From Macrostomum lignano (taxonomy: Eukaryota), in assembly GCA_002269645.1 (NCBI GenBank), contig NIVC01002029.1:1-64000 (forward strand): a stretch of DNA of 64,000 nucleotides, given 5' to 3'. Below, in pieces: positions 13,619 through 60,700 of this stretch; position 1 is the first letter of the stretch; each line of letters starts with the position of its first letter. The position numbers were made by a program, and so were the translations under genes. The notes beneath the pieces are model-generated. The model did no database searches and was not told the origin of the DNA. It saw only the letters and a list, made by a program, of their open reading frames with translations.

Positions 13619-13943
<325 letters not shown>

Positions 13944-33911: not shown

Positions 33912-34676
33912 GAATAGAATAGAATAGAATAGAATAGAATAGAATAGAATAGAATAGAATAGAATAGAATAGAATAGAATAGAATAGAATAGAATAGAAT
34001 AGAATAGAATAGAATAGAATAGAATAGAATAGAATAGAATAGAATAGAATAGAATAGAATAGAATAGAATAGAATAGAATAGAATAGAATAGAATAGAAT
34101 AGAATAGAATAGAATAGAATAGAATAGAATAGAATAGAATAGAATAGAATAGAATAGAATAGAATAGAATAGAATAGAATAGAATAGAATAGAATAGAAT
34201 AGAATAGAATAGAATAGAATAGAATAGAATAGAATAGAATAGAATAGAATAGAATAGAATAGAATAGAATAGAATAGAATAGAATAGAATAGAATAGAAT
34301 AGAATAGAATAGAATAGAATAGAATAGAATAGAATAGAATAGAATAGAATAGAATAGAATAGAATAGAATAGAATAGAATAGAATAGAATAGAATAGAAT
34401 AGAATAGAATAGAATAGAATAGAATAGAATAGAATAGAATAGAATAGAATAGAATAGAATAGAATAGAATAGAATAGAATAGAATAGAATAGAATAGAAT
34501 AGAATAGAATAGAATAGAATAGAATAGAATAGAATAGAATAGAATAGAATAGAATAGAATAGAATAGAATAGAATAGAATAGAATAGAATAGAATAGAAT
34601 AGAATAGAATAGAATAGAATAGAATAGAATAGAATAGAATAGAATAGAATAGAATAGAATAGAATAGAATAGAATA
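33912..34676. repeat. (GAATA)n pentamer microsatellite
   Basis: About 150 perfect units; explains the FYSIL-type ORFs. Confidence 0.99.
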
Positions 34677-41499: not shown

Positions 41500-44151
41500 T
41501 CCTGAAGGACTGGTGCTTGTGTTATGGCTGTCTCCTGAAGGACTGGTGGTTGTGTTATGGCTGTCTCCTGAAGGACTGATGGTTGTGTTATGGCTGTCTC
41601 CTGAAGGACTGGTGGTTGTGTTATGGCTGTCTCCTGAAGGACTGGTGGTTGTGTTATGGCTGTCTCCTGAAGGACTGGTGGTTGTGTTATGGCTGTCTCC
41701 TGAAGGACTGGTGGTTGTGTTATGGCTGTCTCCTGAAGGACTGGTGGTTGTGTTATGGCTGTCTCCTGAAGGACTGGTGGTTGTGTTATGGCTGTCTCCT
41801 GAAGGACTGGTGGTTGTGTTATGGCTGTCTCCTGAAGGACTGGTGGTTGTGTTATGGCTGTCTCCTGAAGGACTGGTGGTTGTGTTATGGCTGTCTCCTG
41901 AAGGACTGGTGGTTGTGTTATGGCTGTCTCCTGAAGGACTGGTGGTTGTGTTATGGCTGTCTCCTGAAGGACTGGTGGTTGTGTTATGGCTGTCTCCTGA
42001 AGGACTGGTGGTTGTGTTATGGCTGTCTCCTGAAGGACTGGTGGTTGTGTTATGGCTGTCTCCTGAAGGACTGGTGGTTGTGTTATGGCTGTCTCCTGAA
42101 GGACTGGTGGTTGTGTTATGGCTGTCTCCTGAAGGACTGGTGGTTGTGTTATGGCTGTCTCCTGAAGGACTGGTGGTTGTGTTATGGCTGTCTCCTGAAG
42201 GACTGGTGGTTGTGTTATGGCTGTCTCCTGAAGGACTGGTGGTTGTGTTATGGCTGTCTCCTGAAGGACTGGTGGTTGTGTTATGGCTGTCTCCTGAAGG
42301 ACTGGTGGTTGTGTTATGGCTGTCTCCTGAAGGACTGGTGGTTGTGTTATGGCTGTCTCCTGAAGGACTGGTGGTTGTGTTATGGCTGTCTCCTGAAGGA
42401 CTGGTGGTTGTGTTATGGCTGTCTCCTGAAGGACTGGTGGTTGTGTTATGGCTGTCTCCTGAAGGACTGGTGGTTGTGTTATGGCTGTCTCCTGAAGGAC
42501 TGGTGGTTGTGTTATGGCTGTCTCCTGAAGGACTGGTGGTTGTGTTATGGCTGTCTCCTGAAGGACTGGTGGTTGTGTTATGGCTGTCTCCTGAAGGACT
42601 GGTGGTTGTGTTATGGCTGTCTCCTGAAGGACTGGTGGTTGTGTTATGGCTGTCTCCTGAAGGACTGGTGGTTGTGTTATGGCTGTCTCCTGAAGGACTG
42701 GTGGTTGTGTTATGGCTGTCTCCTGAAGGACTGGTGGTTGTGTTATGGCTGTCTCCTGAAGGACTGGTGGTTGTGTTATGGCTGTCTCCTGAAGGACTGG
42801 TGGTTGTGTTATGGCTGTCTCCTGAAGGACTGGTGGTTGTGTTATGGCTGTCTCCTGAAGGACTGGTGGTTGTGTTATGGCTGTCTCCTGAAGGACTGGT
42901 GGTTGTGTTATGGCTGTCTCCTGAAGGACTGGTGGTTGTGTTATGGCTGTCTCCTGAAGGACTGGTGGTTGTGTTATGGCTGTCTCCTGAAGGACTGGTG
43001 GTTGTGTTATGGCTGTCTCCTGAAGGACTGGTGGTTGTGTTATGGCTGTCTCCTGAAGGACTGGTGGTTGTGTTATGGCTGTCTCCTGAAGGACTGGTGG
43101 TTGTGTTATGGCTGTCTCCTGAAGGACTGGTGGTTGTGTTATGGCTGTCTCCTGAAGGACTGGTGGTTGTGTTATGGCTGTCTCCTGAAGGACTGGTGGT
43201 TGTGTTATGGCTGTCTCCTGAAGGACTGGTGGTTGTGTTATGGCTGTCTCCTGAAGGACTGGTGGTTGTGTTATGGCTGTCTCCTGAAGGACTGGTGGTT
43301 GTGTTATGGCTGTCTCCTGAAGGACTGGTGGTTGTGTTATGGCTGTCTCCTGAAGGACTGGTGGTTGTGTTATGGCTGTCTCCTGAAGGACTGGTGGTTG
43401 TGTTATGGCTGTCTCCTGAAGGACTGGTGGTTGTGTTATGGCTGTCTCCTGAAGGACTGGTGGTTGTGTTATGGCTGTCTCCTGAAGGACTGGTGGTTGT
43501 GTTATGGCTGTCTCCTGAAGGACTGGTGGTTGTGTTATGGCTGTCTCCTGAAGGACTGGTGGTTGTGTTATGGCTGTCTCCTGAAGGACTGGTGGTTGTG
43601 TTATGGCTGTCTCCTGAAGGACTGGTGGTTGTGTTATGGCTGTCTCCTGAAGGACTGGTGGTTGTGTTATGGCTGTCTCCTGAAGGACTGGTGGTTGTGT
43701 TATGGCTGTCTCCTGAAGGACTGGTGGTTGTGTTATGGCTGTCTCCTGAAGGACTGGTGGTTGTGTTATGGCTGTCTCCTGAAGGACTGGTGGTTGTGTT
43801 ATGGCTGTCTCCTGAAGGACTGGTGGTTGTGTTATGGCTGTCTCCTGAAGGACTGGTGGTTGTGTTATGGCTGTCTCCTGAAGGACTGGTGGTTGTGTTA
43901 TGGCTGTCTCCTGAAGGACTGGTGGTTGTGTTATGGCTGTCTCCTGAAGGACTGGTGGTTGTGTTATGGCTGTCTCCTGAAGGACTGGTGGTTGTGTTAT
44001 GGCTGTCTCCTGAAGGACTGGTGGTTGTGTTATGGCTGTCTCCTGAAGGACTGGTGGTTGTGTTATGGCTGTCTCCTGAAGGACTGGTGGTTGTGTTATG
44101 GCTGTCTCCTGAAGGACTGGTGGTTGTGTTATGGCTGTCTCCTGAAGGACT
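41500..44151. repeat. Near-perfect 33-bp tandem array GTTATGGCTGTCTCCTGAAGGACTGGTGGTTGT, ~80 copies
   Basis: Units appear identical except for two variants at the left end. The 33-nt unit keeps four reading frames open. Confidence 0.99.
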
Positions 44152-45103: not shown

Positions 45104-48100
45104 ATGAAGCCGGCAGACAGTCTTGGCGCTGCAGCCCCGACGGCGCACTGGTGCCTCACGCTGCTACTGGCTCTGTCCCTGGCCTTCCTGGCCTGGCGAA
45201 CCGTCGTTATGGACGCTCAGATTCGGGCCATCGCTGAATCGTTGGACGCCGCCGCCGTCAATGCTTCATTGAGCGACGATGCCGGCCTTCACCTGTGGAT
45301 CAGCGGCGGCTCCGCGCGTCCGCAGCTGCGGATGCGACGCAGTGTTGGCCGGCGAAGAGGTCTTCAAGACGGCGACGGCCGCTGGTTGGATGCCGTCAGC
45401 AGATTCAGGGTGAGACCGGGCAGCTCTGCTCGATCGGCTGGTGGCTGCGCCCTAGATTCTTAGAGTACACCAATGAGCCCTCCTAGATTCTTAGAATACA
45501 CCAATGAGCCCTCCTAGATTCTTAGGATACACCGATGAGCCCTCCTAGATTCTTAGGATACACCAATGAGCCCTCCTAGATTCTTAGGATACACCGATGA
45601 GCCCTCCTAGATTCTTAGGATACACCAATGAGCCCTCCTAGATTCTTAGGATACACCGATGAGCCCTCCTAGATTCTTAGGATACACCAATGAGCCCTCC
45701 TAGATTCTTAGAGTACACCGATGAGCCCTCCTAGATTCTTAGGGTACACCGATGAGCTTCCTAGATTCTTAGAGTGCACCGATGAGTCCTCCTAGATTCT
45801 TAGGGTACACCGATGAGCCCTCCTAGATTCTTAGGGTACACCGATGAGTCCTCCTAGATTCTTAGAGTGCACCGATGAGTCCTCCTAGATTCTTAGAGTG
45901 CACCGATGAGTCCTCCTAGATTCTTAGAGTGCACCGATGAGTCCTCCTAGATTCTTAGAGTGCACCGATGAGCCCTAGCTTATTATGGTACACCAATGAG
46001 CCCTCCTAGATTCTTAGGGTACACCGATGAGCCCTCCTAGATTCTTAGGATACACCAATGAGCCCTCCTAGATTCTTAGGGTACACCAATGAGACCTCCT
46101 AGATTCTTAGGGTACACCGATGAGCCCTACTAGATGCAATGCGAAGTTAAGTGTCTTGCTCAAGGACACAAATTGTGTCCAAGAATAAAACAATAATATA
46201 AACTGAAATTCTGTTTTGTCGATTAGCAGCAGTGCTTATCAAAGCTTCAACTGACTGGCGATTGCGCAATCAATCAGCTGCAGCTTCGTTGCAGCTTGCT
46301 CAGTTGGTCGTAAAAAAGGGACTGATTGATTAAAGATTTTAGCGCATTGACTGAAAAGAGTTCAAAGAAAATGACTCAACAGTCTGAATGAAAAAGTTGC
46401 AGAAAGTGGAAAATTCCTTTATTTAGATTGGAAAAAATATTTACCTTTTAATATACAACGTGCTGAACAGGTAGAACAGGTGCAGTAGTGCTAAGGACAG
46501 GTAGAACAGGTGAAGTAGTGCTAAGGACAGGTAGAACAGGTGCAGTAGTGATAAGCACCGGTAGATCAGGTGGAGTAGTGCTATGGACAGGTAGAACAGG
46601 TGCAGTAGTGCTAAGGACAGGTAGAACAGGTGCAGTAGTGATAAGGACCGGTAGAACAGGTGCAGTAGTGCTATGGACAGGTAGAACAGGTGCAGTAGTG
46701 CTAAGGACAGGTAGAACAGGTGCAGTAGTGCTAAGGACAGGTAGAACAGGTGCAGTAGTGCTATGGACCGGTATAACAGGTGCAGTCGTGCTATGGACCG
46801 GTAAAACAGGTGCAGTAGTGATATGGACCGGTAGAACAGGTGCAGTAGTGCTAAGGACCGGTAGAACAGGTGCAGTAGTGCTATGGACCGGTAGAACAGG
46901 TGCAGTAGTGCTATGGACAGGTAGAACAGGTGCAGTAGTGCAAAGGACAGGTAGAACAGGTGAAGTAGTGCTAAGGACAGGTAGAACAGGTGCAGTAGTG
47001 CTAAGGACAGGTAGAACAGGTGCAGTAGTGCTATGGACCGGTATAACAGGTGCAGTCGTGCTATGGACCGGTAGAACAGGCGCAGTAGTGATATGGACCG
47101 GTAAAACAGGTGCAGTCGTGCTATGGACCGGTAGAACAGGTGCAGTAGTGCTATGGACCGGTATAACAGGTGCAGTAGTGCTATGGACCGGTAGAACAGG
47201 TGCAGTAATGCTATGGACCGGTATAACAGGTGGAGTAGTGCTATGGACCGGTAGAACAGGTGCAGTAGTGCAAAGGACAGATAGAACAGGTGCAGTAGTG
47301 CAAAGGACAGATAGAACAGGTGCAGTAGTGCAAAGGACAGATAGAACAGGTGCAGTAGTGCAAAGGACAGATAGAACAGGTGCAGTAGTGCAAAGGACAG
47401 ATAGAACAGGTGCACCAGAAGATGAAGCAAGATCGAAGAGTAGAAGGCTGTGTGCCTGGATAGAAGCGCAAAAGCTACCAAAAGGAGCTTTCAGAGCAAG
47501 GCTATTTAAGCCGTCAAGCTTAACTATTCTACTCAACACCTTCCTCATTTGCGAGTCCAATGCATCAATTTTGCCGCCTCATCAACCCTGTTTAAAAATG
47601 CCCAGATGCTCGTGTCGTTGCTAACGAGACTAAGCCGCTCTCCACTTACTCGAGGAAAGGTTTTGGAGCAAAGACAGAGATTAACCTTCCTGAGCCAATG
47701 GCTTAACCAAACCAAAACCTACTATTATAGTGGGGAGGGCAACGGACATCAAGGTGTTGAAGAGGCGATGGGGCTAGCAACAAAAAAGGTTTGGAAGAAT
47801 AAGCTGCTAAATAAACGAAGCACTCTGAGCGTAGAAAAAAGGCAGCCAAAACTGCCAATACCGCAGCTTCCCACTTTTGCATTCAAGGGCGGAGCACTTG
47901 ACAGCACGGCCCTCTTCAACTGAAAACTCGGGAATCTCCCCAGTTTCCTGAACTTGATCCCAATGGCAGGGGAAGCTGAATAAGTTTATTCCCGCCCGCC
48001 ATCAGGCGGCTGCGTGCGGAAGCGCCGATCTGAGAGCTGGCCACTTGTGCAGACGGCAGAGGGTTGAGGACAGGGAGGAGATTAAGCGTAGGGAACCAAT

Positions 48101-51071
48101 ATTCAGCGCCATGTGGCAAGGGCATTCTAGAGTTTCCAATCGCTATTCAACAGCCCAAGGTGGAGATTTCCTTCGCATTCTTTAGTTCTGAGCGTATAGC
48201 GTCAAGCATTTCCAACAAGCCGGCTGCAATGCAAACTGAAGCTTTTAGGACTTTTTATGATGGCTGATAAACTGCGTTCATAAACTTGTTCATAGTTTAC
48301 AATATGGCTCGCTAACAATGCCCAGGTTGCCGACTTGAAGTCCATCTGTGTTGCCGTGTCCGAGGCCTGCGCTGTGAAGCACCGGGCCCGCAGTGCGAGG
48401 AATTCTAAGCGTGAGGACTTTTTGAATGTTTTGCTTGTCAAGATTCAAATTGCTCAAACCCAGCCCTTCAAACACAGCCCTTCAAACCCAACCCCTCAAA
48501 CCCAGCCCTTCAAACACAGCCCTTCAAACACAGCCCTTCAAACCCAGCTCTTCAAACCCAGCCCTTCAAACCCAGCCCTTCAAACCCAGCCCTTCAAACC
48601 CAGCCCTTCAAACCCAGCCCTTCAAACCCAGCCCTTCAAACCCAGCTCTTCAAACCCAGCCCTTTAAACCCAACCCCTCAAACCCAACCTCTCAAACCCA
48701 ACCCCTCAAACCCAACCTCTCAAACCCAACCCCTCAAACCCAACCTCTCAAACCCAACCCCTCAAACCCAACCTCTCAAACCCAACCCCTCAAACCCAAC
48801 CTCTCAAACCCAACCCCTCAAACCCAACCTCTCAAACCCAACCCCTCAAACCCAACCCCTCAAACCCAACCCCTCAAACTCACCCCTTCAAACCCGAAAT
48901 TTCAAACCCAACCCCTCAAACCCAACCCCTCAACCACAATCCCTCAAACCCAATCTTTCAAACTCAACCCCTTAAACCCAACCCCTCAAACCCAACCCCT
49001 TGAATCCAACCCCTCAAACCCAACCCCTCAAACCCAACCCCTCAACCACAATCCCTCAAACCCAACCCCTCAAACCCAATCCCTCAAACCCAACCCCTCA
49101 AACCCAATCCCTCAAACCCAACCCCTCAAATCCAACCCCTCAAACCCAACCGCTCAAACTTATCGCTCTCAAGCCAATTCCCTCAAGCCAAAACCTCAAA
49201 ACCGCTAATGTATTTCACTGGAAGATAGACGAGAACCCGATTTGGCCTGACGAAAGAGACCCGAATCTCTTTCCAGCGAAGTCAACCACCCAATCCGCTG
49301 CTTTGGGCCGCCCTGGGCCGCCCGGACCAAAGGGCGACAAAGGCGACAAAGGCGACATGGGCGAGCGCGGTCTGCTCGGCCCCATCGGGCTGCCCGGCAA
49401 GATGGGACCCCGAGGCGTCCAAGGTCCCAAAGGCGAACCGGGCGACTCTTTCAGACCAAGTGAGCCGCCTGGGTTGTTTTTTTATCGTAAAAACTCAAAA
49501 AGAATCCTAACCAATTGATGCTCAATTTACTCGTAAAACCATCTTTAACCTATTTCAGGCAACATGAAGTGCAGAGTTGACTACCAGGGCGAGACCGTGT
49601 GCAGCTACAGGGATTCCAACAACAATCTGGTTAACATGCGGAGCCGGGGAGAGAAGCAGTGGCAGCCAGAGCCCTGGTGTACTTGTAAGTGGCATTGAGA
49701 AATACCGTGTTACTTGTATTGCGGTGGGTGTGGATTGGGGTGGGTGTGGATTGGGATGGGTGTGGATTGGGGTGGGTGTGGATTGGGGTGGGTGTGGATT
49801 GGGGTGGGTGTGGATTGGGGTGGGTGTGGATTGGGGTGGGTGTGGATTGGGGTGGGTGTTGATTGGGGTGGGCGGGAATTGGGGTGGGTGTTGATTGGGG
49901 TGGGTGTTGATTGGGGTGGGCGTGGATTGGGGTGGGTGTTGATTGGGGTGGGTGTTGATTGGGGTGGGTGTGGATTGGGGTGGGTGTGGATTGGGGTGTC
50001 TGGGTATTGGGGTGGGTGTTGACTAGGGTGGGTGTGGATTGGGGTGAGCTCTGCTGAATGCGTTTTGGGTGTAAATGGATTGGTGTCACCATGGGGTGTT
50101 ATAATACAACCCAGTATAGTATCGCATATTAATTTCTCATTAACCGCATCTGTGTTTATTCTTCCACCAATCGCAGGCCAAAAAGGCGAGCCGGGCGACC
50201 GAGGCCTGGTCGGGCTACGCGGCGAGAAAGGCGAGCCGGGGGTGTGCAACAGGGCCTGCTTTAACGGTGAGACAGGAATTTCGCTGCTTGAATTTATGGC
50301 TTTTTAAAGATTCAAGAAATCGTTGTAAGGGATTTCAAGAGACGAAATCGCATACAGGCTATTACAAACTTACAGGCTGTTACAGACTTACAGGCTATTA
50401 CAGACTTACAGGCTAGTACAGACTTACAGGCTAGTACAGACTTACAGGCTAGTACAGACTTACAGGCTATTACAGACTTACAGGCTTACAGACTCTATGG
50501 GGTTACAGACTTACAGGTTTAGACTATTGGATTTAATAATAATAAATAATTGAATACACCTGCCCTAATGGGCAGACGTGCAACCGACAGCTCAGCCGCA
50601 GCTTATTGCGCGGCGCATCTGAAGGCTGCGTACGGCTGTTCAGTCCAAGGACTGGGGGTCGCCACACACAGCCTCAATTACCCCAGCTAATGCTGGCATC
50701 CATTTTACAGCTGGGTGAACAGAAGCAATGTAGAGTTACGTGTCTTGCTCAAGGACGCAAATTGTTCCAGCGGGATCGGGAATCGAACCCCCGACCCCCG
50801 ACCTTCAAGTCGTGGTCCGATGCTCTAACCACTAGGCTAAAACCCTCTTGTATATGGGCTTACAGACTACAAGCTCTTGCAGAATTCCAGCGCTTAAAGA
50901 CAAGGAGCTCTTACAGACTACTAAAAATAGTATCTAAAATGGATTTCATGCGCTGCACTCATTGCAGAGCCACCGGTCCAGCCATCAAAGACCAACGGGT
51001 CCCCCGGGCTGACCAACTGCAGCTACGCTTCTTTGCTACTCCTCCTGCAGCTCTGCTTTTTAGCCATCTGA
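45104..51071 (+). CDS. Short membrane collagen (colmedin/MACIT-like N-terminus) with a C-terminal GPI-like signal, 297 aa
   Basis: Exons 45104-45409, 48326-48410, 49277-49459, 49559-49684, 50177-50266, 50968-51071: all GT-AG, phases 0,1,1,1,1, total 894 nt in one frame. Hydrophobic segment at aa 16-31, furin site RMRR, Cys motif [19 protein letters not shown], 16 + 7 Gly-X-Y triplets, hydrophobic C-terminus [13 protein letters not shown]. Confidence 0.85.
45451..46133. repeat. Minisatellite, 31-bp unit CCAATGAGCCCTCCTAGATTCTTAGGATACA (collagen intron 1)
   Basis: About 22 head-to-tail units with no spacers. Confidence 0.95.
46136..46176 (-). mobile_element. CORE-SINE core fragment
   Basis: GCAATGCGAAGTTAAGTGTCTTGCTCAAGGACACAAATTGT closely matches the core of the copy at 50535-50844. 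Confidence 0.7.
46465..47412. repeat. Minisatellite, 30-bp unit CAGGTAGAACAGGTGCAGTAGTGCTATGGA (collagen intron 1)
   Basis: About 31 units; explains the [10 protein letters not shown] ORFs. Confidence 0.95.
48460..49205. repeat. 14-bp C/A-rich tandem CAAACCCAACCCCT / CAAACCCAGCCCTT (collagen intron 2)
   Basis: Tandem units visible. Confidence 0.95.
49722..50046. repeat. 16-bp G-rich tandem TTGGGGTGGGTGTGGA (collagen intron 4)
   Basis: Tandem units with recurrent G3/G4 runs. Confidence 0.95.
50362..50525. repeat. 17-bp tandem TTACAGACTTACAGGCT (collagen intron 5)
   Basis: Tandem units visible. Confidence 0.85.
50535..50844 (-). mobile_element. Near full-length tRNA-derived CORE-type SINE
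   Basis: On the minus strand: A-box TAGCCTAGTGG, B-box GGTTCGATTCC, MIR-core-like GTCCTTGAGCAAGACACGTAAC...CTGTAAAATGG, and an (ATT)n-like tail. A homologous copy lies at 62254-62428. Confidence 0.85.
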
Positions 51072-51469
51072 GACAGCCGCCCCGCCTCAGCCTACCTGGG
51101 GAGCACGCCCGATGTCCCACTCGTCAAATCATCATCCTCGAGTTTGTCTAAGTTCATTTTTAGCAGTAGCAAATCAACTAAAAATAATTTGCTCTATACT
51201 CGCTACTCATGCTACTGATAGTAGAGTTAGTAGGGGGATTGTGTATCGAATAAAAAACTAAATCATAATTTTAAATGTTTTTGTTACTCTAGCATGCCTT
51301 AAGAAGCCGCGTTATCAAAGTTTTGTTGAAATTCGTATTTATTAACCAATGAATGTTTTGCATAATAAACGGCTTTATTCACATTCTAATTTTACTCAAA
51401 TTTTCACGATTGAATAAAACCAAATCAGAATGATCTATTTATATTTGTATTTGTATTAGAGTGAGTACA

Positions 51470-52090
51470 TAGAGTCACACCAGAGTCACACCAGAGTCAC
51501 ACAGAGTCACACTAGAGTCACACCAGAGTCACACAGAGTCACACCAGAGTCACACCAGAGTCACACCAGAGTCACACCAGAGTCACACCAGAGTCACACC
51601 CAAGTCACACCAGATTCACACCCAAGTTACGCCAGAGTCACACCAGAGTCACACCAGAGTCACGCTAGAGTCACACCAGAAGCACACCAGAGCCACACGA
51701 GAGTCACACCAGAGCCACACCCAAGTCACACCCAAGTCACACCCAAGTTACGCCAGAGTCACAACAGAGTCACACCAGAGTCACACCCAAGTCACACCCA
51801 AGTCACACCAGAGTCGCACCAGAGTCACACCAGAGACACACCAGAGCCACACCAGAGTCACATCAAAGCCACAACAGAGTCACACGAGAGTCACACCAGA
51901 GCCACACCAGAGCCACACCAGAGTAACACCAGAGTCACACCAGTGTCACACGAGAGTCACACCAGAGTCACAACAGTCATACCAGAGTCACTTAAGTAAC
52001 ACCAGAGTCACACCAGTGTCACACGAGAGTCACACCAGAGTCACAACAGTCACACCAGAGTCACTTAAGTCACACCAGAGTCACACCAGA
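51470..52090. repeat. 11-bp tandem GAGTCACACCA
   Basis: Tandem units visible. Confidence 0.95.
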
Positions 52091-52188
52091 GAAGATGTGA
52101 CTCCGTGGAATATTCTCTTTTAGATAATCTGATCAGAATTAATACTCCTGTTTTGCATGCACCTACGCCGTAACAGCGCGGTGCCTAT

Positions 52189-52395
52189 GGGGCCGTAGCC
52201 CAGTGGTCTAACGCGGGCCCTTTTGTGCCAGCGGCCCAGGCTCGATTCCAAGTGCAGTCAAATTAATTTGGGGACTGGATTGGACTCTCGGCTTGGCTCT
52301 GCTCGTGCAATCGAGGGCCAACCCCCCCCCCCCAAGGCACAGTGAAGTGTGCATGCCTAACGATAAATAAAGTTAGGGCTGTACACTCCTGTGTG
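52189..52395 (+). mobile_element. tRNA-derived SINE of a second family
   Basis: GGGGCCG TAGCCCAGTGG (A-box) ... GGCTCGATTCC (B-box-like). The cloverleaf is incomplete (no 3' acceptor strand), and the body is unrelated to the CORE-SINE. Confidence 0.6.
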
Positions 52396-52419
52396 AGTGT
52401 GTGCCTGTGCGTATGACCA

Positions 52420-52575
52420 AGACCAGTCACCCCGGCCAATCACCCCGGCCAGTCACCCCGGCCAGTCACCTCGGCCAGTCAACCAGTCACTCAGGCCAGT
52501 CACCCCGGCCAGTCACCTCGGCCAGTCACCCCAGCCAGTCACCTCGGCCAGTCACCCTCAGTCGGCCAGCCCGCC
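52420..52575. repeat. 13-bp tandem GCCAGTCACCCCG abutting the DEG/ENaC stop codon
   Basis: Tandem units visible. Confidence 0.9.
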
Positions 52576-55500
52576 AGCGTCAAACTTTTGAACGCGGCCA
52601 GCAGCCGTAGCTGCCGCAGTCACCGCAGCCGCAGCAGGTGGCGCCTCTCCGCTGTCGCCGGCGCCATCAGAGCAGCCAAGCAGTCTCTTAAACAGGTAAT
52701 AAATAAACTCGAGCAGCTCCACCGAAGTGATGACAGTCAGGCCTCCCCACAGAGAGAATGAGCCGCCGATCTGTGAGATCAACGCCTCCAGGGTGATCTG
52801 CAGTTTCTCCCGGGTCACCGTTCGGGCAAAATCCGGCCGGAACACCCGCAGCCGAAGGAAATTATCCCTGATAAGGTTGCCCTCCTCCGACTGCAGCAGG
52901 TCGGCGGCCTTGGCGGCCTGGCCGCTCTGCACGAGGCTGTCCAATCGGCTGTACACGCTGAACTTGCCAGCCAGCATGGAGTTGTTGCGCACCCTTAGCC
53001 TGTAGAAGTCCAGCTCGTTAGTTTTCGGCGGCCACAAAGATTGATAGGCGGTGCTTTTGAACGCCAGTGAGTGACAGGAGGCCGGGCAAGCGACGCCCGA
53101 GTCGCTGGCGATGAGGTTGCGCGGGTCCAGCTCCTGCTTCGAGGCGCAGTCGTAGCTGCGGGTAGATAGAGGCGGATCTATAGACTGACAATAGATCTGC
53201 TTGTAAATGTATATAGAAATTTACAGTATGCATCTATAGACACAAAGAGCTCAGACCTATATACAGAGCCAAATGACCAAATATAAAGACATCAAGAGAT
53301 CTAGATATATACGCCAAGAGGCCACCATAGACGCCAAGAGATTCACATGGATAGGCATTCAAAGACTCGCATCTATAGATTCCAAGAGCCACAGTGACCT
53401 ACAGGCACCTACAAATCTAAATATATAGAAACCCAGTGATCTATAGAAACCCAGTGATCTATAGACAGCCAGAGATTTATAGACACCCAGAGATCTATAG
53501 ACACTCAGATATCCTCATCTACAGTATAGACACTTAAATATTTAAAACGTTTAACAACCAGAGATTTGGATCTATAGCCACCCAGAAATCAGGTATTTTG
53601 ACGAACAGACTCAGATCTAGGTACCTAAGCAAGATCTAGAGACGCCCAGATCTCAGATCTATACAGGCCCCTAAGCGCCCAAGCCGCTGCAGTGTGATTC
53701 GGACTGCTCACGCAAAGCAGGGAATTATTAAATTAATTTCGAGTCAAAGGTTCTGAGGTCAAAATTTTCCTTTTCCAATACATCATTTTAGCCCTTAGAC
53801 AGGGAATTATCGCCTCGGATTACAACTTTTCCCTTGAGGCACTTATAGCCTAGAAATGCGTTTCACTCCTCAAAATATTGGATTTCTTTTAGGCGCATAA
53901 ATGAAATTAAATTCGTACATAGCATTATTATAAACAAATTGCAGTTATTCAGTCTTAATTCTGTTGCATCTTGTCTGTAAGTCTTCTGTACCTGTCTATA
54001 AATCTTCTGTATCTGGCTGTAAGACTTCTGTATCTGTCTATAAGTCTCCCTGTATCAGTCTGTAAGTCTCCCTGTATCATTCTGTAAGTCTACCTGTATC
54101 TGTCTGTAAGTCTACCTGTATCAGTCTGTAAGTCTCCCTGTATCTGTCTGTAAATCTCCCTGTATCTGCCTGTGAGTCTCCCTGTATCAGTCTGTAAGTC
54201 TCCCTGTATCTGTCTGTAAATCTCCCTGTATCAGTTGTAAGTCTCCCTGTATCTGTCTGTAAGTCTCCCTGTATCTGTCTGTAAGTCTCCCTGTATCTGC
54301 CTATGAGTCTCCCTGTATCTGCCTGTGAGTCTCCCTGTATCTGCCTGTAAGTCTACCTGTATCTGTCTGTAAGTCTCCCTGTATCAATCTGTAAGTCTAC
54401 CTGTATCTGTCTGTAAGTCTACCTGTATCAGTCTATAAGTCTCCCTGTATCTGTCTGTAAATCTCCCTGTATCTGCCTGTGAGTCTCCCTGTATCAGTCT
54501 GTAAGTCTCCCTGTATCTGTCTGTAAATCTCCCTGTATCAGTCTGTAAGTCTCCCTGTATCTGTCTGTAAGTCTCCCTGTATCTGTCTGTAAGTCTCCCT
54601 GTATCTGCCTATGAGTCTCCCTGTATCTGCCTGTGAGTCTCCCTGTATCTGCCTGTAAGTCTACCTGTATCTGTCTGTAAGTCTCCCTGTATCAATCTGT
54701 AAGTCTACCTGTATCAGTCTGTAAGTCTACCTGTATCTGTCTGTAAGCCTCCCTCTATCAGTCTGTAAGTCTCCCTGTATCTGCCTGTGAGTCTCCCTGT
54801 ATCTGCCTGTGAGTCTCCCTGTATCTGCCTGTGAGTCTCCCTGTATCAGTCTGTAAGTCTACCTGTATCTGTCTGTAAGTCTCCCTGTATCAGTCTGTAA
54901 GTCTACCTGTATCAGTCTGTAAGTCTCCCTGTATCAGTCTGTAAGTCTACCTGTATCTGTCTGTAAGTCTACCTGTATCAGTCTATAAGTCTACCTGTAT
55001 CTGTCTGTAAGTCTACCTGTATCTGTCTGTAAGTCTACCTGTATCAGTCTGTAAGTCTCCCTGTATCAGTCTGTAAGTCTACCTGTATCAGTCTGTAAGT
55101 CTACCTGTATCTGTCTGTAAGTCTACCTGTATCAGTCTGTAAATCTCCCTGTATCAGTCTGTAAGTCTCCCTGTATCTGCCTGTGAGTCTCCCTGTATCT
55201 GTCTGTAAGTCTACCTGTATCTGTCTATAAGCCTCCCTGTATCAGTCTGTAAGTCTCCCTGTATCTGTCTGTAAGTCTCCCTCTATCAGTCTGTAAGTCT
55301 ACCTGTATCTGTCTGTAAGTCTACCTGTATCAGTCTGTAAGTCTACCTGTATCTGTCTGTAAGTCTACCTGTATCTGTCTGTAAGTCTACCTGTATCTGT
55401 CTGTAAGTCTACCTGTATCTGTCTGTAAGTCTCCCTCTATCAGTCTGTAAGTCTACCTGTATCTGTCTGTAAGTCTACCTGTATCAGTCTGTAAGTCTAC

Positions 55501-57202
55501 CTGTATCTATCTGTAAGTCTACCTGTATCTGTCTGTAAGTCTACCTGTATCTGTCTGTAAGTCTACCTGTATCAGTCTGTAAGTCTACCTGTATCAGTCT
55601 GTAAGTCTACCTGTATCTGTCTGTAAGTCTACCTGTATCTGTCTGTAAGTCTACCTGTATCTGTCTGTAAGTCTCCCTGTATCTGTCTGTAAGTCTCCCT
55701 GTATCTGCCTGTAAGTCTACCTGTATCTGTCTGTAAGTCTCCCTGTATCTGTCTGTAAGTCTCCCTGTATCTGTCTGTAAGTCTCCCTGTATCTGTCTGT
55801 AAGTCTCCCTGTATCAGTCTGTAAGTCTCCCTGTATCTGCCTGTAAATCTCCCTGTATCAGTCTGTAAGTCTACCTGTATCTGTCTGTAAGTCTACCTGT
55901 ATCTGCCTGTAAGTCTACCTGTATCTGTCTGTAAGCGAAAACAGAGAAATTGTGTTGAGAACAATTGTGCGCCAAAGCGGTGTCTAGTAGCATTTTTTTA
56001 AATTGTAGCATCAAACTTGGGTTAAACAACAAATTTCTCCTGGCATCGCACCTGGTGAAGAAGGCGTTGAAGTTAAGCGACTGGTTGCCAACCTGGCCGC
56101 AGAAAGGCACCCCGCTGTGCTCGCTACTGAGCGGGAAGTCCGGATCAACACAGCCGCAGTGTCGCATGATGGAGTTCTGCACCTCCAGCTGGCGGCAGGT
56201 GAGACTGTCGTACTCGAACTCACGACTGTTTGCGCCTCTGTCGTCGCCGCCGCCGCCGCCGCCGCTGCCGATGTGCAGCTGGATTCGCCGCCTCTCCGTG
56301 CAGTTCTGCTTCGGCGAGTGTTTGTACTTTTCAATGCTGCGCGCTTCGACCAACTCGATGACACTCTTTGTGCCCGGCAGGACGTGGATGCCGAGCTGAC
56401 TGATCCTGGGATAGCTTCCCGCCGGGTGCACCATCACGTGGGCCCCGATGCTGTCGTCCAGGTCGAACAGAGTTGAAGAGTCGTTGCAGAGATCCTCGTC
56501 TTGACAGCTGTGCATCTGCTCCGTGTCAAGGTACAGGTCCATCTCCAGCGCCTGGGTTGTGTTGGCAATGTCGGCCGTAGGCGTCAGCATGAAGCAGGTG
56601 AAGAACTGCGGATTCGGTATGAGCAGCACGTCCGAGTCCAGGTTGCAGCTTCGCTGTTGGAGCTTCGAGTCCTTGACGTAGGTGAAGTTGCAGGTGCCAT
56701 TCAGCACGAAGTCGTGAAAAGCCAGACCGATGCGCCGGACGGTGTCCACGCCCCAGTTCTGATAGAGAAACGACTTGTCTGTCAGCGCCTTGAAGCTCTG
56801 GGAGAAGTTGGCGTCGTTTCTCAACTGGGTGAGCATGTGCAGCAGGCGGATGTCAGCGACGTTCTTTTCCGTCCGGCTGCCGAACCTGCGAATCATGTCA
56901 GTGGAGAAGGGCTGCAGGTTGCAGACGGTCACGGAGGGGAACGGCACGAGTTCAGAGTAGTGCTCAGTGGTGACTTCCAGCACGGTCTGGTAGAGGCGGT
57001 AGGTGCTGACCAAGCGCACCGTGAAGACCAGGCTGATTCCCAGGAAGCCGGACACGGAGACCAGCCACACCAGCTTCCAGCAGGCGCTGCGGCAGCGCAG
57101 AATCCTGGGCACTCCGCGGACAGACGACAGCAGGCAGAACCGGATGAGCTCGTCTTTGACCGACTCTGGCTGGCTCGATCTTTGCATGATGTCGCGGCTC
57201 AT
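52558..57202 (-). CDS. DEG/ENaC (ASIC/degenerin family) amiloride-sensitive-type cation channel subunit, 582 aa
   Basis: Exon 1 57202-56052 (donor ACCAG|GTGCGA) and exon 2 53155-52558 (acceptor CTACCCGCAG), joined in phase 2. TM1 KLVWLVSVSGFLGISLVF, FPSVTVCNLQP, GAHVMVHP, Cys-rich thumb CRQ...HCGC...CPASC, TM2 LISQIGGSFSLWGGLTVITSVELLEFIY. Confidence 0.93.
53970..55935. repeat. 22-bp minisatellite GTCTGTAAGTCTCCCTGTATCT filling the DEG/ENaC intron
   Basis: About 89 units with recurrent variants. Confidence 0.97.
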
Positions 57203-57514
57203 AGCTGCTTCTGCTACAGACAGGCAGGCAGGCAAGCAAAAGTTCCCGAAGATTGCCTGAGGATTTCCTGCCTTTAGTCCACGAATTCACCCTCCCTCTG
57301 TCCTTCTGTCCGCCAATGCGCGAGTTTCGCCGCTCACTGCTTGAACGCATCGGGGCGGAGTTGCAGTGCACTTCTGGTCTTCCGAATTGCAAATGCAGCC
57401 AGCAGGTGTTTTGTCTGGGCTGCGCTCACAAGTTTATCAAGCTGCTTTTTCATGAACTGCTGCCGGAGACCGGCAGGCAAGCAAAGTTCCGGCGAAATTC
57501 CAGCCACTCCTGTC

Positions 57515-57702
57515 TGTAGTATAGTTCAGTGCGATGTACAATATTGGCGCGCAAATATTATTAGTCACGTGTTGCAATGTATTACGTAAGACTCACGCGC
57601 ACTTACTCTTCACATATATAAATATACTTGCAGGGCAAGTCGGCCCATTTATAAGATTCTTCGTGCACTCGCAAACCCTCCGATTTTGTCTGAGTCACTA
57701 CA
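57515..57702 (+). repeat. 5' LTR
   Basis: Direct repeat of 61951-62138; contains a TATATAAATA box. Confidence 0.97.
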
Positions 57703-57769
57703 TGGCGTCGCAAGCAAACTATTGACTGATCATCACTCTCTAACCCAGCGCGGTTCCAGCCACACAAAC

Positions 57770-60700
57770 ATGGCCCAAGCTTTGCAACTCACTGCACCAG
57801 ATGCATTTGATATCGATAGCGATCCACTCACACGAGCCCAGAGATGGAAGACTTGGGCACGGAGGTTCAATAGCTACATTCGCGCTGCTGGCATCACAGA
57901 TGCGACACAACAGCTGGAGTTGCTGGTCTACGCAGCGGGAGAGAAGTTGGAAGACTTTATGGAAGACAACAGTGTTCAAAAAGGAAAATCTACAAACGAG
58001 CTCATCCAAAAGCTACAAGAGATCTTCGACCAGAAAAACAGCGTCGTCTTCCTCCGGTACCAATTCGAGACCTGCAGACAGGAGGAGGGGGAGTCCATCG
58101 ATGCGTGGTACCATCGGCTGCGCAAGGCCGCGGATCAATGCGAATTCGGAGAACTACGGGACTCTCTCATCAGGGACAAGGTGGTCGCCCACTACCGATC
58201 GGAGAAGATCAGAAGGGAGCTCCTTCAGCTGAACGATATCTGTCTAGCTGACGTACTGAAGCGAATCCGAGCAAGGGAAGCTGCGGAGCAACAGGCACAG
58301 GCCATGGAAGAAAACAGCTCAGGTGGCGCCGGCGCCATGACGACCGCGAACGTGGCAGCGCTAGGCCCACCCGAGCACGACCGTCGCAGCCATTCAGAAG
58401 GGATCCTGCAATGAAGGACGGTGGCATCAGCTGCGAGCGCTGCGGACGGCCGGGTCATCGAACGTGCGAGGCTGCTAGAGACAAAGCATGTCGACGCTGC
58501 GGTAAGATTGGCCATTTCGCCCGGGCATGTCGGGGAACGTCCAGAATACCCGTGAGAGCTGTCAACAAACCGGACGATCGCTCCTACGGGCAAGTCGAAT
58601 ATCTGCAGGACAACTCCACTGAGCACGAGCTTTTCAGCCTCCGAAATAGCGGATCAGCATGGACTCAAGCCACCGTCAACGGATTCAAGACAACCCTGCT
58701 TATCGACAGTGGAGCGGCCTGCAACATCATCGACAGGGAGGCCTTCGAAAGGATGCCACAGAAGGCCAGGCTCCAAGCAGCCAGTGATCGGGTCTATCCC
58801 TATGGAAGCCAACAGCCACTGAAGCTGCTCGGCAAGATCGACCTACAGGTCAGCGTTTTCGGTTGCCAGGAGACGCTTCCGTTCCTGGTGCTGGACGGAA
58901 AGGGTGCTTGCATAATAGGCCGCAGGAGCGCGGAAGACCTAGGAGTTCTGCGAGTCGGCCCGGAAGACAAGGCAGCGTGTGAGCTACGCTCGGAGTGTCC
59001 GACTGACAGGCTGTTAGCCGGCGTTCCATAAGACCTTCGGCAGTCCCCAGGTGCTCCATCTTTAGACGAAATCCTCAAGGAAAATGCACAGGCCTTCGAC
59101 GGAATCGGCTGTCTTAAGAACTACGCAGCCCGTATCTTCCTGGAAGAGGGCGCAAGACCAGTGTGCCATCCACCATCAAGAGTGCCAATTCACCTCGCCC
59201 AGCAGTGGACGCCGAGCTCCAGTACCTAGAAGAACAAGGCATCATTGAGCCAGTGGAGGGACCCTGCCCGTGGGTTTCTCGTATCGTCGTCGTCCCCAAA
59301 GAAGCTCCTGGCGAGATCAGGATCACTCAGGATCTGAGGGAGCTAAACAAGTCTGTCGTCAGGGAGCGAACCCAATACCGACCTTTGAGGAGGTAACAGG
59401 CGACATGGCAGGAGCGACGCTGTTCTCAGAGTTGGACGTCGCAAAAGCTTTCTATCAAATCCCTGTGTCAGAGGAGTGCCGGCATCTTCTAACTTTTTCA
59501 ATGCCTCGAGGTCTTCGGCGGCTGACGAGACTCTGCATGGGGCTATCAACGGCGCAGAAATTCTTCAAGCTGTTATGTCATCCGCGCTGGCTGGACTTTC
59601 AAAAGTAAAATGGATCCACGATGACATTATTGTCTATGGCCACAGCGTGGCGGAGCATCACAACAATCTGCGGGAGTGCCTCCAGCGGCTGGCGCAGCAC
59701 GGACTGACGCTCAACCCGGCCAAGTGCAAGCTGGCACGAACGCAAGTCACCTTCATGGGGATGCGATTGTCGAAGGACGGAGTCAGGCCAACCGAGTCAA
59801 AGCTGGAGGCAGTTAATGCATTTGCAGAGCCAACGAATGTCACGGAGGTGCGCTCGTTCTTGGGACTTGTCAACTACCTGGCCGCATTCACCCCGAGGCT
59901 GGCGGACCTGGCAAAGCCGCTGCGCAACCTGACAAGGAAGGGCCAGCCCTGGGCATGGGCCGATCTGGAAAGACAAGCCTTCAGCGACATCAAGTCTCAA
60001 ATCGCGTCAAGTGGCTCTCTTGCCTTTTTCAACCATCGCCTTCCGACGCAACTCATTGTCGACGCTGGGCCAGCGGGGCTGGGTGCAATCCTGTCACAGA
60101 CACAATCGGACGGAACCAGGCGGCCCATCGCATACGCTAGCCGGACACTGTCGGACGTTGAGCAACGCTATTCCCAAACAGAGAAAGAGGCGTTGGCCGT
60201 GAAGTTCGGCTGTTTAAAGTTTCAATTCTAACTCCACGGCGCGCCGATGTTCACGGTGCAAACCGACCACAAGCCACTGGTTGCTCTGTTCGGCAGCAGT
60301 TCGAGACCCCCTCCGAGAATCGAAAGGATGGCATTGCGCATTCAGCGTATGAAATTCACAGTCGAGTACCAGCCGGGCCCGCTCAACCCGGCAGACGTGC
60401 TCAGCCGACAGCCACTGCCGACACCCGCACCGAATGTGGGCGAACAGCTGGATGCACTTTCCATCGCCGCTGTTGTACAGGCGGCCGTACCAAATGCGCT
60501 GTCACTGACCAGCGTACAGAAGAGCTCGCAAAAGGACGCAACAATTCAAGCGGCGATTCGCGCCTTAGAGACAGGGCGGTGGAGCCTGGAGTCAGCAGAA
60601 CTGCGGTCGCTGCATGCGCTGCGTCACGAACTGTCGGCAGTGGACGGGGTGCTCCTACGGGGCCAGCGGATCATCGTCCCGGTGGCGCTCCGACGGCTTG

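What the first reader, a model, noticed from the sequence alone, without database searches (positions are those of the whole stretch)
45104..51071. Short collagen predicted to be anchored at both ends (type II TM + GPI signal), lacking the olfactomedin domain
Seen: six phase-consistent exons give a 297-aa protein. Its parts are a short N-tail, a hydrophobic segment (aa 16-31), an amphipathic stretch, a furin site RMRR, and W...[19 protein letters not shown]. These are followed by 16 Gly-X-Y triplets, a Cys-containing non-collagenous insert ([11 protein letters not shown]...WCTC), 7 more triplets and CNRAC. The last exon reads [34 protein letters not shown]: small residues, a spacer and a hydrophobic end with no cytoplasmic tail. 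Known: TM + furin site + this Cys motif + collagen resembles colmedins (gliomedin/UNC-122) and MACIT collagens, which end in an olfactomedin or short soluble domain rather than a GPI signal. Dual TM+GPI topology is rare (e.g. BST2/tetherin). Inference: a possibly undescribed collagen class that either tethers two membranes or is converted by furin into a GPI-anchored trimer.
Basis: partly seen in the sequence, partly recalled or inferred. Interest (0 to 1): 0.75.

Follow-up and report, generated by a model that had tools for sequence, protein, structure and literature searches.

The report
Unannotated flatworm mini-collagen with GPI-like tail
An intact but unannotated six-exon gene of the flatworm Macrostomum lignano encodes a 297-residue membrane-targeted short collagen whose last exon looks like a GPI lipid-anchor signal. 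No transcript, homologue or dedicated predictor could be brought to bear, so the unusual "anchored at both ends" reading remains a hypothesis.

Summary
The window is Macrostomum lignano.

- **Annotation and homology:** The gene is not annotated. No annotated protein matches its non-collagen parts, and an exhaustive search with exon 1 found nothing real.
- **Domains:** No olfactomedin or other domain lies in the 1.5 kb before a convergent ASC/ENaC gene.
- **Coding evidence:** The model frame scores best in codon usage in all six exons, though weakly for exon 6 alone.
- **Last exon:** GC content jumps at 50968, which favours that acceptor over a consensus-stronger rival at 51051.
- **Tail:** It passes a rule-based GPI filter that 2.5% of random terminal ORFs pass. 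The three rival tails fail it.
- **N-terminus:** The hydrophobic segment is borderline between a signal peptide and a signal anchor. RMRR lies downstream of it.

The likeliest mature form is therefore a furin-processed trimer held only by GPI, not a doubly anchored protein. It resembles MACITs, colmedins and nematode cuticle collagens in architecture but fails each family's sequence or domain test. I call it a new variant of membrane-associated collagens, of moderate interest, unproven without RNA evidence.

The parts
45104..45409 (+). Exon 1 (aa 1-102). It holds the start ATG (A at -3), the N-tail, the hydrophobic segment, an amphipathic helix, the furin site and the start of the W...SRFR motif. 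The donor is CAGG|GTGAGA.
   Evidence: Codon score +18.6, the best of three frames. An in-frame stop lies upstream at about 45065.
45149..45196 (+). Hydrophobic core at aa 16-31 ([16 protein letters not shown]), lying inside an uncharged run at aa 6-31. It is either a signal anchor or the h-region of a signal peptide.
   Evidence: The best 19-residue Kyte-Doolittle mean is 2.0. The -3/-1 sites fall only after residues 19, 23, 25 and 27 within the core, or after 42 and 44.
45329..45340 (+). RMRR (aa 76-79), the only R-x-K/R-R proprotein-convertase consensus in the protein. RRR at aa 83-85 follows it.
   Evidence: motif scan.
48326..48410 (+). Exon 2 (aa 103-131). It encodes VADLKSIC-x6-C (C110 and C117, at 48347-48370), then the basic stretch [11 protein letters not shown] with an RSAR RxxR site (aa 124-127).
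   Evidence: Codon score +9.1.
49277..49459 (+). Exon 3 (aa 131-192). COL1 consists of 16 Gly-X-Y triplets at 49306-49449.
49559..49684 (+). Exon 4 (aa 192-234). This is the non-collagenous insert with C196, C206, C232 and C234 ([11 protein letters not shown]...WCTC). The donor is a perfect GTAAGT.
   Evidence: It has the strongest codon score, +20.2 over 41 codons, reached by 0.6% of null windows.
50177..50266 (+). Exon 5 (aa 234-264). COL2 consists of 7 triplets (50185-50247), ending in G-V-C257-N-R-A-C261.
50968..51071 (+). Exon 6 (aa 264-297 plus the stop). It encodes the putative GPI-attachment signal. The omega candidate N273-G-S is at 50994-51002. The spacer is [10 protein letters not shown]. 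The hydrophobic end L286-I297 is at 51033-51068, and TGA is at 51069-51071.
   Evidence: GC rises from 0.40 to 0.61 at 50968. GC3 is 0.76 in the model frame against 0.48-0.52 in the other two.
51051..51151 (+). Rival terminal exon. The acceptor TACTCCTCCTGCAG| has 85% pyrimidine upstream and a CTGAC branch-like site about 38 nt upstream. It would give the tail [33 protein letters not shown].
   Evidence: codon score +0.8; not GPI-like. I consider it less likely because the GC-rich block already begins at 50968.
51249..51254 (+). First AATAAA after the stop, lying in an AT-rich stretch. It is a candidate polyadenylation signal, about 180 nt into the 3' UTR.

Best explanation
This is a real, intact, lineage-restricted gene of Macrostomum lignano for a membrane-associated mini-collagen.

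Inferred mechanism:
1. The N-terminal hydrophobic segment targets the chain to the ER with the C-terminus in the lumen.
2. A juxtamembrane amphipathic helix and the C-x6-C pair bring three chains into register.
3. Two short triple helices (16 and 7 triplets) form, and each is locked by flanking cysteine pairs.
4. The C-terminal ~24 residues act as a GPI-attachment signal, with omega around N273.
5. A proprotein convertase cuts after RMRR79, and possibly after RSAR127, in the late secretory pathway.

The mature product would be a collagen trimer of about 195 residues per chain, held on the cell surface by GPI anchors at its C-terminal end. A doubly anchored form would be at most a transient precursor.

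Shown here: the exon structure, the motifs, the collagen domain, the absence of any other domain, and the absence of detectable homologues. Inferred: topology, trimerisation, furin cleavage, GPI addition and expression.
For: - **Gene structure:** Six in-phase GT-AG exons give an uninterrupted 297-aa ORF.
- **Collagen domain:** Pfam Collagen matches at E=1.1e-12. These are the only long Gly-X-Y runs in 64 kb.
- **Coding signal:** The model frame wins the codon-usage test in all six exons, 72.8 bits in total. Exon/intron GC contrast is present at most boundaries, including 50968.
- **3' end:** The gene is boxed in by a convergent ASC/ENaC gene ending at 52558. No Pfam domain lies in the + strand frames between them. 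AATAAA lies 180 nt after the stop.
- **Tail:** It passes a GPI rule filter that recognises 5 of 6 textbook GPI signals and that 2.5% of 2079 random terminal ORFs pass. All three rival tails fail it.
- **Processing motifs:** RMRR is a full R-x-K/R-R site, and there are five Cys pairs.
- **Precedent:** Two families use an N-terminal TM or signal peptide followed by a furin site ahead of the collagen domain. These are MACITs (PMC4678570, PMC7848082) and nematode cuticle collagens (PMC10538796).
- **A similar protein:** A coral protein found here (P0025) has the same layout. It has a TM, a coiled coil, RLSRR, IC-x6-C before the collagen and G-x-CNRxC after it.
Against: - There is no transcript evidence.
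- The gene is absent from the M. lignano protein sets in the database. The syntenic NCBI contig is only sparsely annotated.
- No homologue of the non-collagen parts was found anywhere, so conservation of the tail cannot be assessed.
- Exon 6 alone has only weak coding statistics; 14-15% of null windows reach its score.
- A rival acceptor at 51051 has a stronger consensus.
- My GPI filter is home-made and was loosened after a first, over-fitted version. No trained GPI, signal-peptide or TM predictor was available.
- The hydrophobic tail is short, 12 residues with one Gln.
Confidence: 0.45

Rival explanations
1. The collagen gene is real but its 3' end is wrong. The hydrophobic tail would then be an accident of the chosen acceptor. 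The protein would really end in another short peptide: via 51051 or 50970, or via intron-5 read-through giving ...[16 protein letters not shown]. It would be a MACIT-like or cuticle-collagen-like type II or secreted mini-collagen that furin simply sheds.
For: - The acceptor at 51051 has 85% pyrimidines, a CTGAC branch-like site about 38 nt upstream and CAG.
- The GC-rich block continues to about 51150, where the alternative frame ends.
- Exon 6's coding score is not significant on its own.
- A 34-codon open frame after a given acceptor is expected in about 20% of cases.
Against: - GC rises at 50968, not at 51051.
- GC3 is 0.76 in the model frame, matching exons 1-5 (0.68-0.79), against 0.48-0.62 for the rivals.
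- The first AG after an intron's branch region is normally the one used.
- Only 2.5% of random terminal ORFs look GPI-like, yet the frame dictated by exon 5's phase does.
Confidence: 0.25
2. The N-terminal segment is a stable type II transmembrane anchor that is kept, and the C-terminus is GPI-anchored. The trimer would then be fixed at both ends, as in tetherin/BST2. It would either lie along one membrane or bridge two.
For: - The uncharged run at aa 6-31 is long enough to span a bilayer, and the best 19-mer KD mean is 2.0.
- There is no helix breaker and no canonical c-region after the core.
- The tail is GPI-like.
- Furin cleavage of MACITs and gliomedin is partial, so membrane-bound and shed forms coexist (PMC7848082, PMC2064815 abstract).
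Against: - A full-consensus RMRR site plus further basic clusters lie between the anchor and the collagen. These sites are used to release MACITs and cuticle collagens (PMC10538796).
- The strongly hydrophobic core is only 16 residues, with small residues at -3/-1 after 25 and 27, which is compatible with a cleaved signal peptide.
- Nothing could be tested experimentally or with trained predictors.
Confidence: 0.1
3. It is not a functional gene. It could be a decaying or never-expressed collagen-like locus in a repeat-rich, recently duplicated genome, or an over-interpreted set of ORFs.
For: - It is missing from both M. lignano annotations represented in the database.
- It has no homologues.
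- Every intron longer than 100 nt is filled with minisatellites.
- The per-exon codon statistics are individually modest.
Against: - The ORF is uninterrupted across six exons with five canonical introns.
- 23 perfect Gly-X-Y triplets cannot arise by chance.
- The correct frame wins in 6 of 6 exons.
- The NCBI annotation of this region is visibly incomplete. It also misses an intact 549-aa 7tm_1 GPCR ORF.
Confidence: 0.2

Closest known systems
MACIT collagens (XIII/XXIII/XXV; C. elegans COL-99)
   Same: Both have an N-terminal membrane segment, a juxtamembrane helix, a furin-type site N-terminal to the first collagenous domain, and interrupted triple helices. MACITs also have a cysteine pair near the C-terminus. 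Their folding is presumed to run N to C and they are shed by convertases (PMC7848082, PMC4678570).
   Different: This protein is 297 aa, against roughly 500-700 as I recall it. It has only two short COL domains. No MACIT appears among the hits, and the conserved MACIT C-terminal motif is not detectably present. MACITs were reported absent from Lophotrochozoa (PMC4678570). MACITs end in a soluble NC domain, not a hydrophobic GPI-like tail.
Colmedins (gliomedin, UNC-122)
   Same: Both are type II-like, with a furin site and a short collagen region. By my recollection of gliomedin, it too has a C-x6-C pair just before the collagen. That point is a lead only and was not tested here.
   Different: The defining olfactomedin domain is absent from the model and from the locus. 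No sequence similarity was detected.
Nematode cuticle collagens (e.g. SQT-3, DPY-17)
   Same: Both are about 300 aa. Both have a predicted TM or a signal peptide at the N-terminus, then an RxxR convertase site, then two Gly-X-Y blocks separated and flanked by cysteines. BLI-4/furin cleavage is needed for secretion of the nematode proteins (PMC10538796).
   Different: There is no Col_cuticle_N (PF01484) match even at E<=1. The organism is a flatworm without a collagen cuticle. The collagen blocks are much shorter. Cuticle collagens are not described with a GPI-like hydrophobic C-terminus.
Acropora muricata 'otolin-1-A-like isoform X1' (P0025, 376 aa)
   Same: This was the only one of 123 retrieved proteins with both Cys motifs. 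It has an N-tail, a TM-like segment, a heptad-rich helix and RLSRR. It has INKIC-x6-C immediately before a collagen block, and GIPGRCNRRC after it, compared with [10 protein letters not shown] here.
   Different: Outside the Gly-X-Y repeats there is no significant alignment (masked phmmer E about 3). The modules are arranged differently, and its C-terminus carries charges and is not GPI-like. Homology is therefore unproven.
Tetherin/BST2 (type II TM plus GPI)
   Same: The predicted combination of an N-terminal membrane segment and a C-terminal GPI signal on an elongated, disulfide-linked oligomer.
   Different: Tetherin is a coiled-coil dimer without collagen and without a furin site between the anchor and the rod. 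The two are unrelated in sequence. The comparison rests on general knowledge and was not tested here.

Membership tests
Colmedin | C-terminal olfactomedin domain (PF02191) | tested here: not met
   Pfam on the model finds only Collagen. The three + strand frames of 51060-52600 and of intron 1's unique part have no domain. A convergent ASC gene starts at 52558.
Colmedin | Type II membrane topology with a collagenous ectodomain | tested here: inconclusive
   The collagen domain is present. The N-terminal segment is borderline between a signal peptide and an anchor by heuristics. No trained predictor was available.
MACIT | Predicted type II transmembrane topology (criterion a of PMC4678570) | tested here: inconclusive
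   There is a 26-residue uncharged run with a 16-residue core, and -3/-1 sites lie within the core.
MACIT | Interrupted collagen triple helices in the ectodomain (criterion b) | tested here: met
   COL1 has 16 triplets and COL2 has 7, separated by an insert of about 48 residues with four Cys.
MACIT | Conserved C-terminal motif with two Cys, and reciprocal best hits to collagens XIII/XXIII/XXV at E<1e-10 (criterion c and validation step) | tested here: not met
   No MACIT is among the 120 best hits of the full protein. The collagen-masked query, which includes the C-terminal region, gave no hit at E<=10.
MACIT | Juxtamembrane furin consensus N-terminal to COL1 | tested here: met
   RMRR at aa 76-79 and RSAR at aa 124-127. 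This is motif presence only; cleavage was not tested.
Nematode cuticle collagen | Col_cuticle_N domain (PF01484) | tested here: not met
   It is not reported by hmmscan at E<=1.
Nematode cuticle collagen | TM or signal peptide, plus RxxR, plus two Cys-flanked Gly-X-Y blocks in a protein of about 300 aa | tested here: met
   The feature list is taken from PMC10538796. This is architecture only.
GPI-anchored protein | N-terminal ER-targeting hydrophobic signal | tested here: met
   The hydrophobic core at aa 16-31 lies near the N-terminus, and the N-side is net more positive than the C-side. This is heuristic.
GPI-anchored protein | C-terminal signal made of a small omega, omega+1, omega+2 triad, a polar spacer of 5-10 residues, and a hydrophobic stretch reaching the C-terminus with no cytoplasmic tail | tested here: met
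   The elements are N273-G-S, then PGLTN(CSYAS), then (CSYAS)[12 protein letters not shown] followed by the stop. It passes the rule filter, as do 2.5% of the null set, and the rival tails fail. NetGPI, PredGPI and big-PI were not available.
GPI-anchored protein | Actual lipid anchoring (PI-PLC release, detergent partitioning) | not testable with these tools
   This needs an experiment.
Dual-anchored (tetherin-like) protein | The N-terminal TM is retained in the mature protein together with the GPI anchor | not testable with these tools
   The RMRR site between the TM and the collagen argues for removal. The extent of cleavage is unknown.

The most novel reading that the evidence does not exclude
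A collagen triple helix fixed to membrane at both ends. It would have a retained type II transmembrane N-terminus and three GPI anchors at the C-terminus, giving a tetherin-like collagen rod. Convertase cleavage would switch it from doubly to singly anchored. Such a protein would represent a previously undescribed mode of collagen-membrane attachment in animals.
Probability: 0.1. Interest if true: 0.8.

Novelty: new variant of a known kind. Interest (0 to 1): 0.45.

Why it matters
Membrane-associated collagens known so far (MACITs, colmedins, ectodysplasin, class A scavenger receptors, many nematode cuticle collagens) are all held by an N-terminal type II anchor and released by proteolysis.

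A collagen held by a C-terminal GPI anchor would be a different way to attach a triple helix to a cell surface. It would be releasable by phospholipases rather than proteases. Its membrane-proximal end would be the C-terminal end. The phrase 'GPI-anchored collagen' occurs in none of the 8.3 million papers searched.

It would also be the first membrane collagen reported from a flatworm. MACITs were not found in Lophotrochozoa (PMC4678570). The planarian matrisome lists only fibrillar, type IV and multiplexin collagens (PMC6453901).

The case also shows that M. lignano annotations miss intact genes whose introns are packed with minisatellites.

The weight of all this is limited. The evidence is one gene model in one genome, without RNA support or conservation.

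Tried and rejected
1. **Full-length homology search.** It was swamped by Gly-X-Y matches to phage tail fibres, C1q/otolin and MARCO, and was uninformative apart from P0025.
2. **Collagen-masked search.** It gave nothing at E<=10.
3. **Exhaustive HMMER with exon 1.** The three hits are translated tandem repeats, with 13, 3 and 6 matched stretches. I rejected them as spurious.
5. **Reaching the syntenic NCBI contig.** The neighbouring GPCR ORF is not on record. The TTLL neighbour gave locus L001 of NIVC01000142.1, collinear with window positions about 15.0-37.6 kb at 94-99.8% identity. That stops about 7.5 kb short of the collagen gene, so no allele or homeologue comparison was possible.
6. **PDB sequence search of the non-collagen parts.** It gave nothing.
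7. **First GPI filter.** It was over-fitted: it rejected all six textbook signals. I discarded it for a looser one.
8. **Suspected tRNA-derived SINE in intron 5.** ARAGORN and Rfam find nothing. It is an interspersed repeat of unknown class.
9. **Downstream olfactomedin, TNF or C1q exon.** Rejected.
10. **Other exon 6 acceptors.** Acceptor 50970 (the second AG of CAGAG) gives codon scores of -4.5 and +0.4 and has G at -3. Acceptor 51051 has the GC step in the wrong place. I judged both less likely, but neither is excluded.
11. **Snellman et al. 2000 (PMC302104).** The paper on the conserved trimerisation sequence is not held.
Full report
**1. What is there**

I re-derived the gene model from the raw sequence. 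Six exons lie on the + strand: 45104-45409, 48326-48410, 49277-49459, 49559-49684, 50177-50266 and 50968-51071. They are joined by five GT...AG introns with entry phases 0,0,1,1,1,1. Together they give an 894-nt CDS and a 297-aa protein that ends at TGA 51069-51071.

- an N-tail, then a hydrophobic core at aa 16-31;
- an amphipathic stretch;
- RMRR at aa 76-79;
- W94...SRFR|VADLKSIC110-x6-C117;
- a basic stretch with RSAR at aa 124-127;
- 16 Gly-X-Y triplets;
- an insert of about 48 residues with four Cys (C196, C206, C232, C234);
- 7 more triplets running into C257-NRA-C261;
- [34 protein letters not shown].

Pfam sees only the collagen repeat, at E=1.1e-12. These are the only long Gly-X-Y runs in any frame of the window.

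**2. Organism and surroundings**

A neighbouring ORF (25802-27238) is 99% identical to Macrostomum lignano BOX15_Mlig029260g2, a tubulin-tyrosine-ligase-like protein. Window positions about 15.0-37.6 kb are collinear at 94-99.8% identity with GenBank contig NIVC01000142.1. The window is therefore from this free-living flatworm, from another haplotype or assembly.

Around the collagen gene lie:
- an 80-copy 33-nt satellite upstream, at 41500-44151;
- a convergent amiloride-sensitive-channel (ASC/ENaC) gene downstream, whose last exon ends at 52558;
- a Ty3/gypsy-type retroelement at about 57.7-61.8 kb;
- further upstream, a 7tm_1 GPCR ORF and an Ig-domain gene.

Only about 1.5 kb of + strand remains after the stop. 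It consists of an AT-rich stretch with AATAAA at 51249 and two minisatellites, and it has no Pfam domain in any frame. The refuting scenario 'transcripts continue to an olfactomedin domain' has no substrate in this locus.

**3. Is the model coding?**

I built a codon table from four confident coding stretches in the window: TTLL, GPCR and two ASC exons. With it, the model frame scores best of the three frames in all six exons, 72.8 bits in total.

Against a null of random open windows, the per-exon tail fractions are 0.18, 0.054, 0.16, 0.006, 0.059 and 0.14. That null is heavy-tailed because minisatellites are open in many frames. Each fraction is modest on its own, but all point the same way. 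Fisher's combination, my own arithmetic, gives about 0.001.

Exons are 56-69% GC and most intron flanks are 29-46%. Exon sequences are unique in the window. I regard exons 1-5 as a real coding structure.

**4. The last exon**

After the exon 5 donor (AACG|GTGAGA) many AGs are possible. Three deserve attention:
- 50970, the second AG of the same CAGAG;
- 51051 (TACTCCTCCTGCAG|), which has the best polypyrimidine tract and a CTGAC branch-like site about 38 nt upstream.

Intron-5 read-through would end the protein after 13 codons.

The evidence favours 50968:
- GC content steps from 0.40 (0.33 in the last 40 nt) to 0.61 exactly there, not at 51051.
- GC3 in the resulting frame is 0.76, like exons 1-5 (0.68-0.79). 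It is 0.48-0.62 in the alternatives.
- Codon scores are +5.1, against -4.5 and +0.8.
- CAG|A is a better acceptor than GAG|C.

The evidence against it:
- The +5.1 score is reached by 14-15% of null windows.
- The GC-rich block runs on to about 51150, where the alternative frame stops.

I put the 50266-50968 junction at roughly 70%.

**5. The C-terminal signal**

From K271 onward there is no charged residue. The tail has three parts:
- N273-G-S, an ideal small omega, omega+1, omega+2 triad;
- a polar, Pro/Gly-containing spacer;
- a hydrophobic end that runs into the stop codon. L286-I297 is 12 residues, or 16-17 counting CSYAS.

That is too short and too marginal for a bilayer-spanning helix, which is the usual character of GPI signals.

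No trained predictor was available, so I wrote a rule filter. The first version was over-fitted and I discarded it. The second recognises 5 of 6 textbook GPI signals that I supplied from memory. The model tail passes it, and all three rival tails fail it. Of 2079 distinct random 'terminal exons' drawn from this window, 53 pass, or 2.5%.

The tail is unlikely to be an accident, but the test is crude. Given a correct exon 6, I estimate about 75% that it functions as a GPI signal.

**6. The N-terminus**

The uncharged run covers aa 6-31. The strongly hydrophobic core is 16 residues, and the best 19-residue Kyte-Doolittle mean is 2.0. Canonical small residues at -3/-1 occur only inside the core (after 19, 23, 25, 27) or far beyond it (after 42, 44). 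No Pro or Gly break follows the core, which runs straight into an amphipathic helix.

This is the grey zone between a long signal peptide and a short signal anchor. C. elegans cuticle collagens, which share this layout, split into about one third signal peptide and two thirds type II TM (PMC10538796). I cannot decide between the two here.

In either case RMRR79, the only full R-x-K/R-R site, lies between this segment and everything collagenous. A second RxxR site (RSAR127) sits 14 residues before COL1.

**7. Mechanism**

The layout is an N-terminal membrane segment, then a helix, a convertase site, a Cys pair and an interrupted collagen. MACITs and cuticle collagens share this layout. In MACITs a juxtamembrane coiled coil nucleates N-to-C folding, and furin releases the ectodomain (PMC7848082, PMC4678570, PMC10538796).

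I infer the same logic here, with one addition. The C-terminal end would be transferred to GPI in the ER. After convertase cleavage the trimer would then stay on the surface through lipid anchors instead of being shed.

A doubly anchored form would exist only before cleavage, or to the extent that cleavage is incomplete. The Cys pairs immediately bracketing each short helix (C-x6-C, C-x9-C, CTC, C-x3-C) plausibly form interchain knots. These would compensate for the short helices of 16 and 7 triplets. All of this is inference from sequence.

**8. Relatives**

- Nothing in the 5.8-billion-protein index matches the non-collagen parts, even at E<=10. This includes the two M. lignano proteomes that are demonstrably in the index.
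- The exhaustive HMMER scan of exon 1 against 1.84 billion representatives returned only three translated tandem repeats.
- PDB sequences gave nothing.

The gene is thus unannotated and, as far as could be tested, an orphan outside its Gly-X-Y repeats.

One hit from the first search is instructive: Acropora muricata 'otolin-1-A-like X1' (P0025). Its layout is:
- an N-tail, a TM-like segment and a heptad-rich helix;
- RLSRR;
- INKIC-x6-C directly before a collagen block;
- GIPGRCNRRC directly after it, compared with [10 protein letters not shown] here.

It is the only one of the 123 retrieved proteins with both Cys motifs. The non-collagen similarity is not statistically significant. This shows a recurring design, not demonstrated homology.

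**9. Family membership**

- **Colmedin:** fails on the defining olfactomedin domain.
- **MACIT:** meets the architectural criteria but fails the sequence criterion, which is the conserved C-terminal motif and reciprocal hits. MACITs were reported absent from Lophotrochozoa.
- **Nematode cuticle collagen:** meets the architecture but has no Col_cuticle_N domain.

It should not be filed under any of these families. It works like them at the N-terminal end and, if the tail is real, unlike any of them at the C-terminal end.

**10. Verdict**

The description is accurate. The 'short collagen without olfactomedin, with a GPI-like tail' part is reasonably supported in silico. The 'anchored at both ends' and 'new class' parts are not established.

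My estimates are:

| Reading | Estimate |
|---|---|
| Real expressed gene | about 0.75-0.8 |
| GPI-anchored mature collagen | about 0.4-0.45 |
| Stably dual-anchored | about 0.1 |

I rate it a new variant of a known kind (membrane-associated collagen-like proteins), with moderate interest at 0.45. The idea is cheap to test with existing RNA-seq data and standard predictors, but at present it rests on one unconfirmed terminal exon in an orphan gene.

Noticed in passing
window 45451-46135, 46467-47414, 48453-49159, 49718-50046, 50353-50517: Every intron of the gene longer than about 100 nt carries its own distinct minisatellite, with periods of 31, 30, 14, 16 and 18 nt and 9-50 copies. Only the 99-nt intron 3 is repeat-free. 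This repeat load may be why annotation pipelines missed the gene.
   Followed up: partly
window 41500-44151: A 33-nt satellite with 80 copies at 99% identity. It is open in several frames on both strands, so mechanical ORF lists show 900-aa 'proteins' here.
   Followed up: partly
window 50616-50796 (+), 62256-62437 (-), fragment 46132-46181: An interspersed repeat, 90% identical between two copies in opposite orientation, one of them inside intron 5. By eye it looks tRNA-derived (GGTTCGAATCC-like core), but ARAGORN and Rfam report nothing.
   Followed up: partly
window 30960-32609 (-): An intact 549-aa rhodopsin-family GPCR ORF (7tm_1, E=2.6e-13). It is not called as a gene on the syntenic NCBI contig (locus L001) and is not on record as a protein. 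It is a second unannotated gene in the same window.
   Followed up: partly
window 52558-53037 and 55871-57235 (-): A two-exon (at least) amiloride-sensitive sodium channel (ASC/DEG/ENaC) gene, convergent with the collagen gene. The roughly 2.8-kb intron between the two pieces was not examined.
   Followed up: partly
window 57686-61805 (+): A Ty3/gypsy-type retroelement. The gag-like ORF, zinc knuckle with aspartyl protease, RT/RNase H and integrase lie in separate ORFs, which implies frame breaks between the pol pieces. I did not look for LTRs.
   Followed up: partly
P0025 (Acropora muricata, 376 aa; not in the window): This coral protein, auto-named 'otolin-1-A-like', has no C1q domain recorded. 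Its layout is TM, coiled coil, RLSRR, then repeated [C-x6-C, collagen, CNRRC] modules. It may mark an undescribed family of cnidarian type II mini-collagens.
   Followed up: partly
window 33912-34676 and 13618-13943: A perfect (GAATA)x153 microsatellite and a (TAGA)x82 microsatellite. They are long, almost uninterrupted simple repeats between genes.
   Followed up: no
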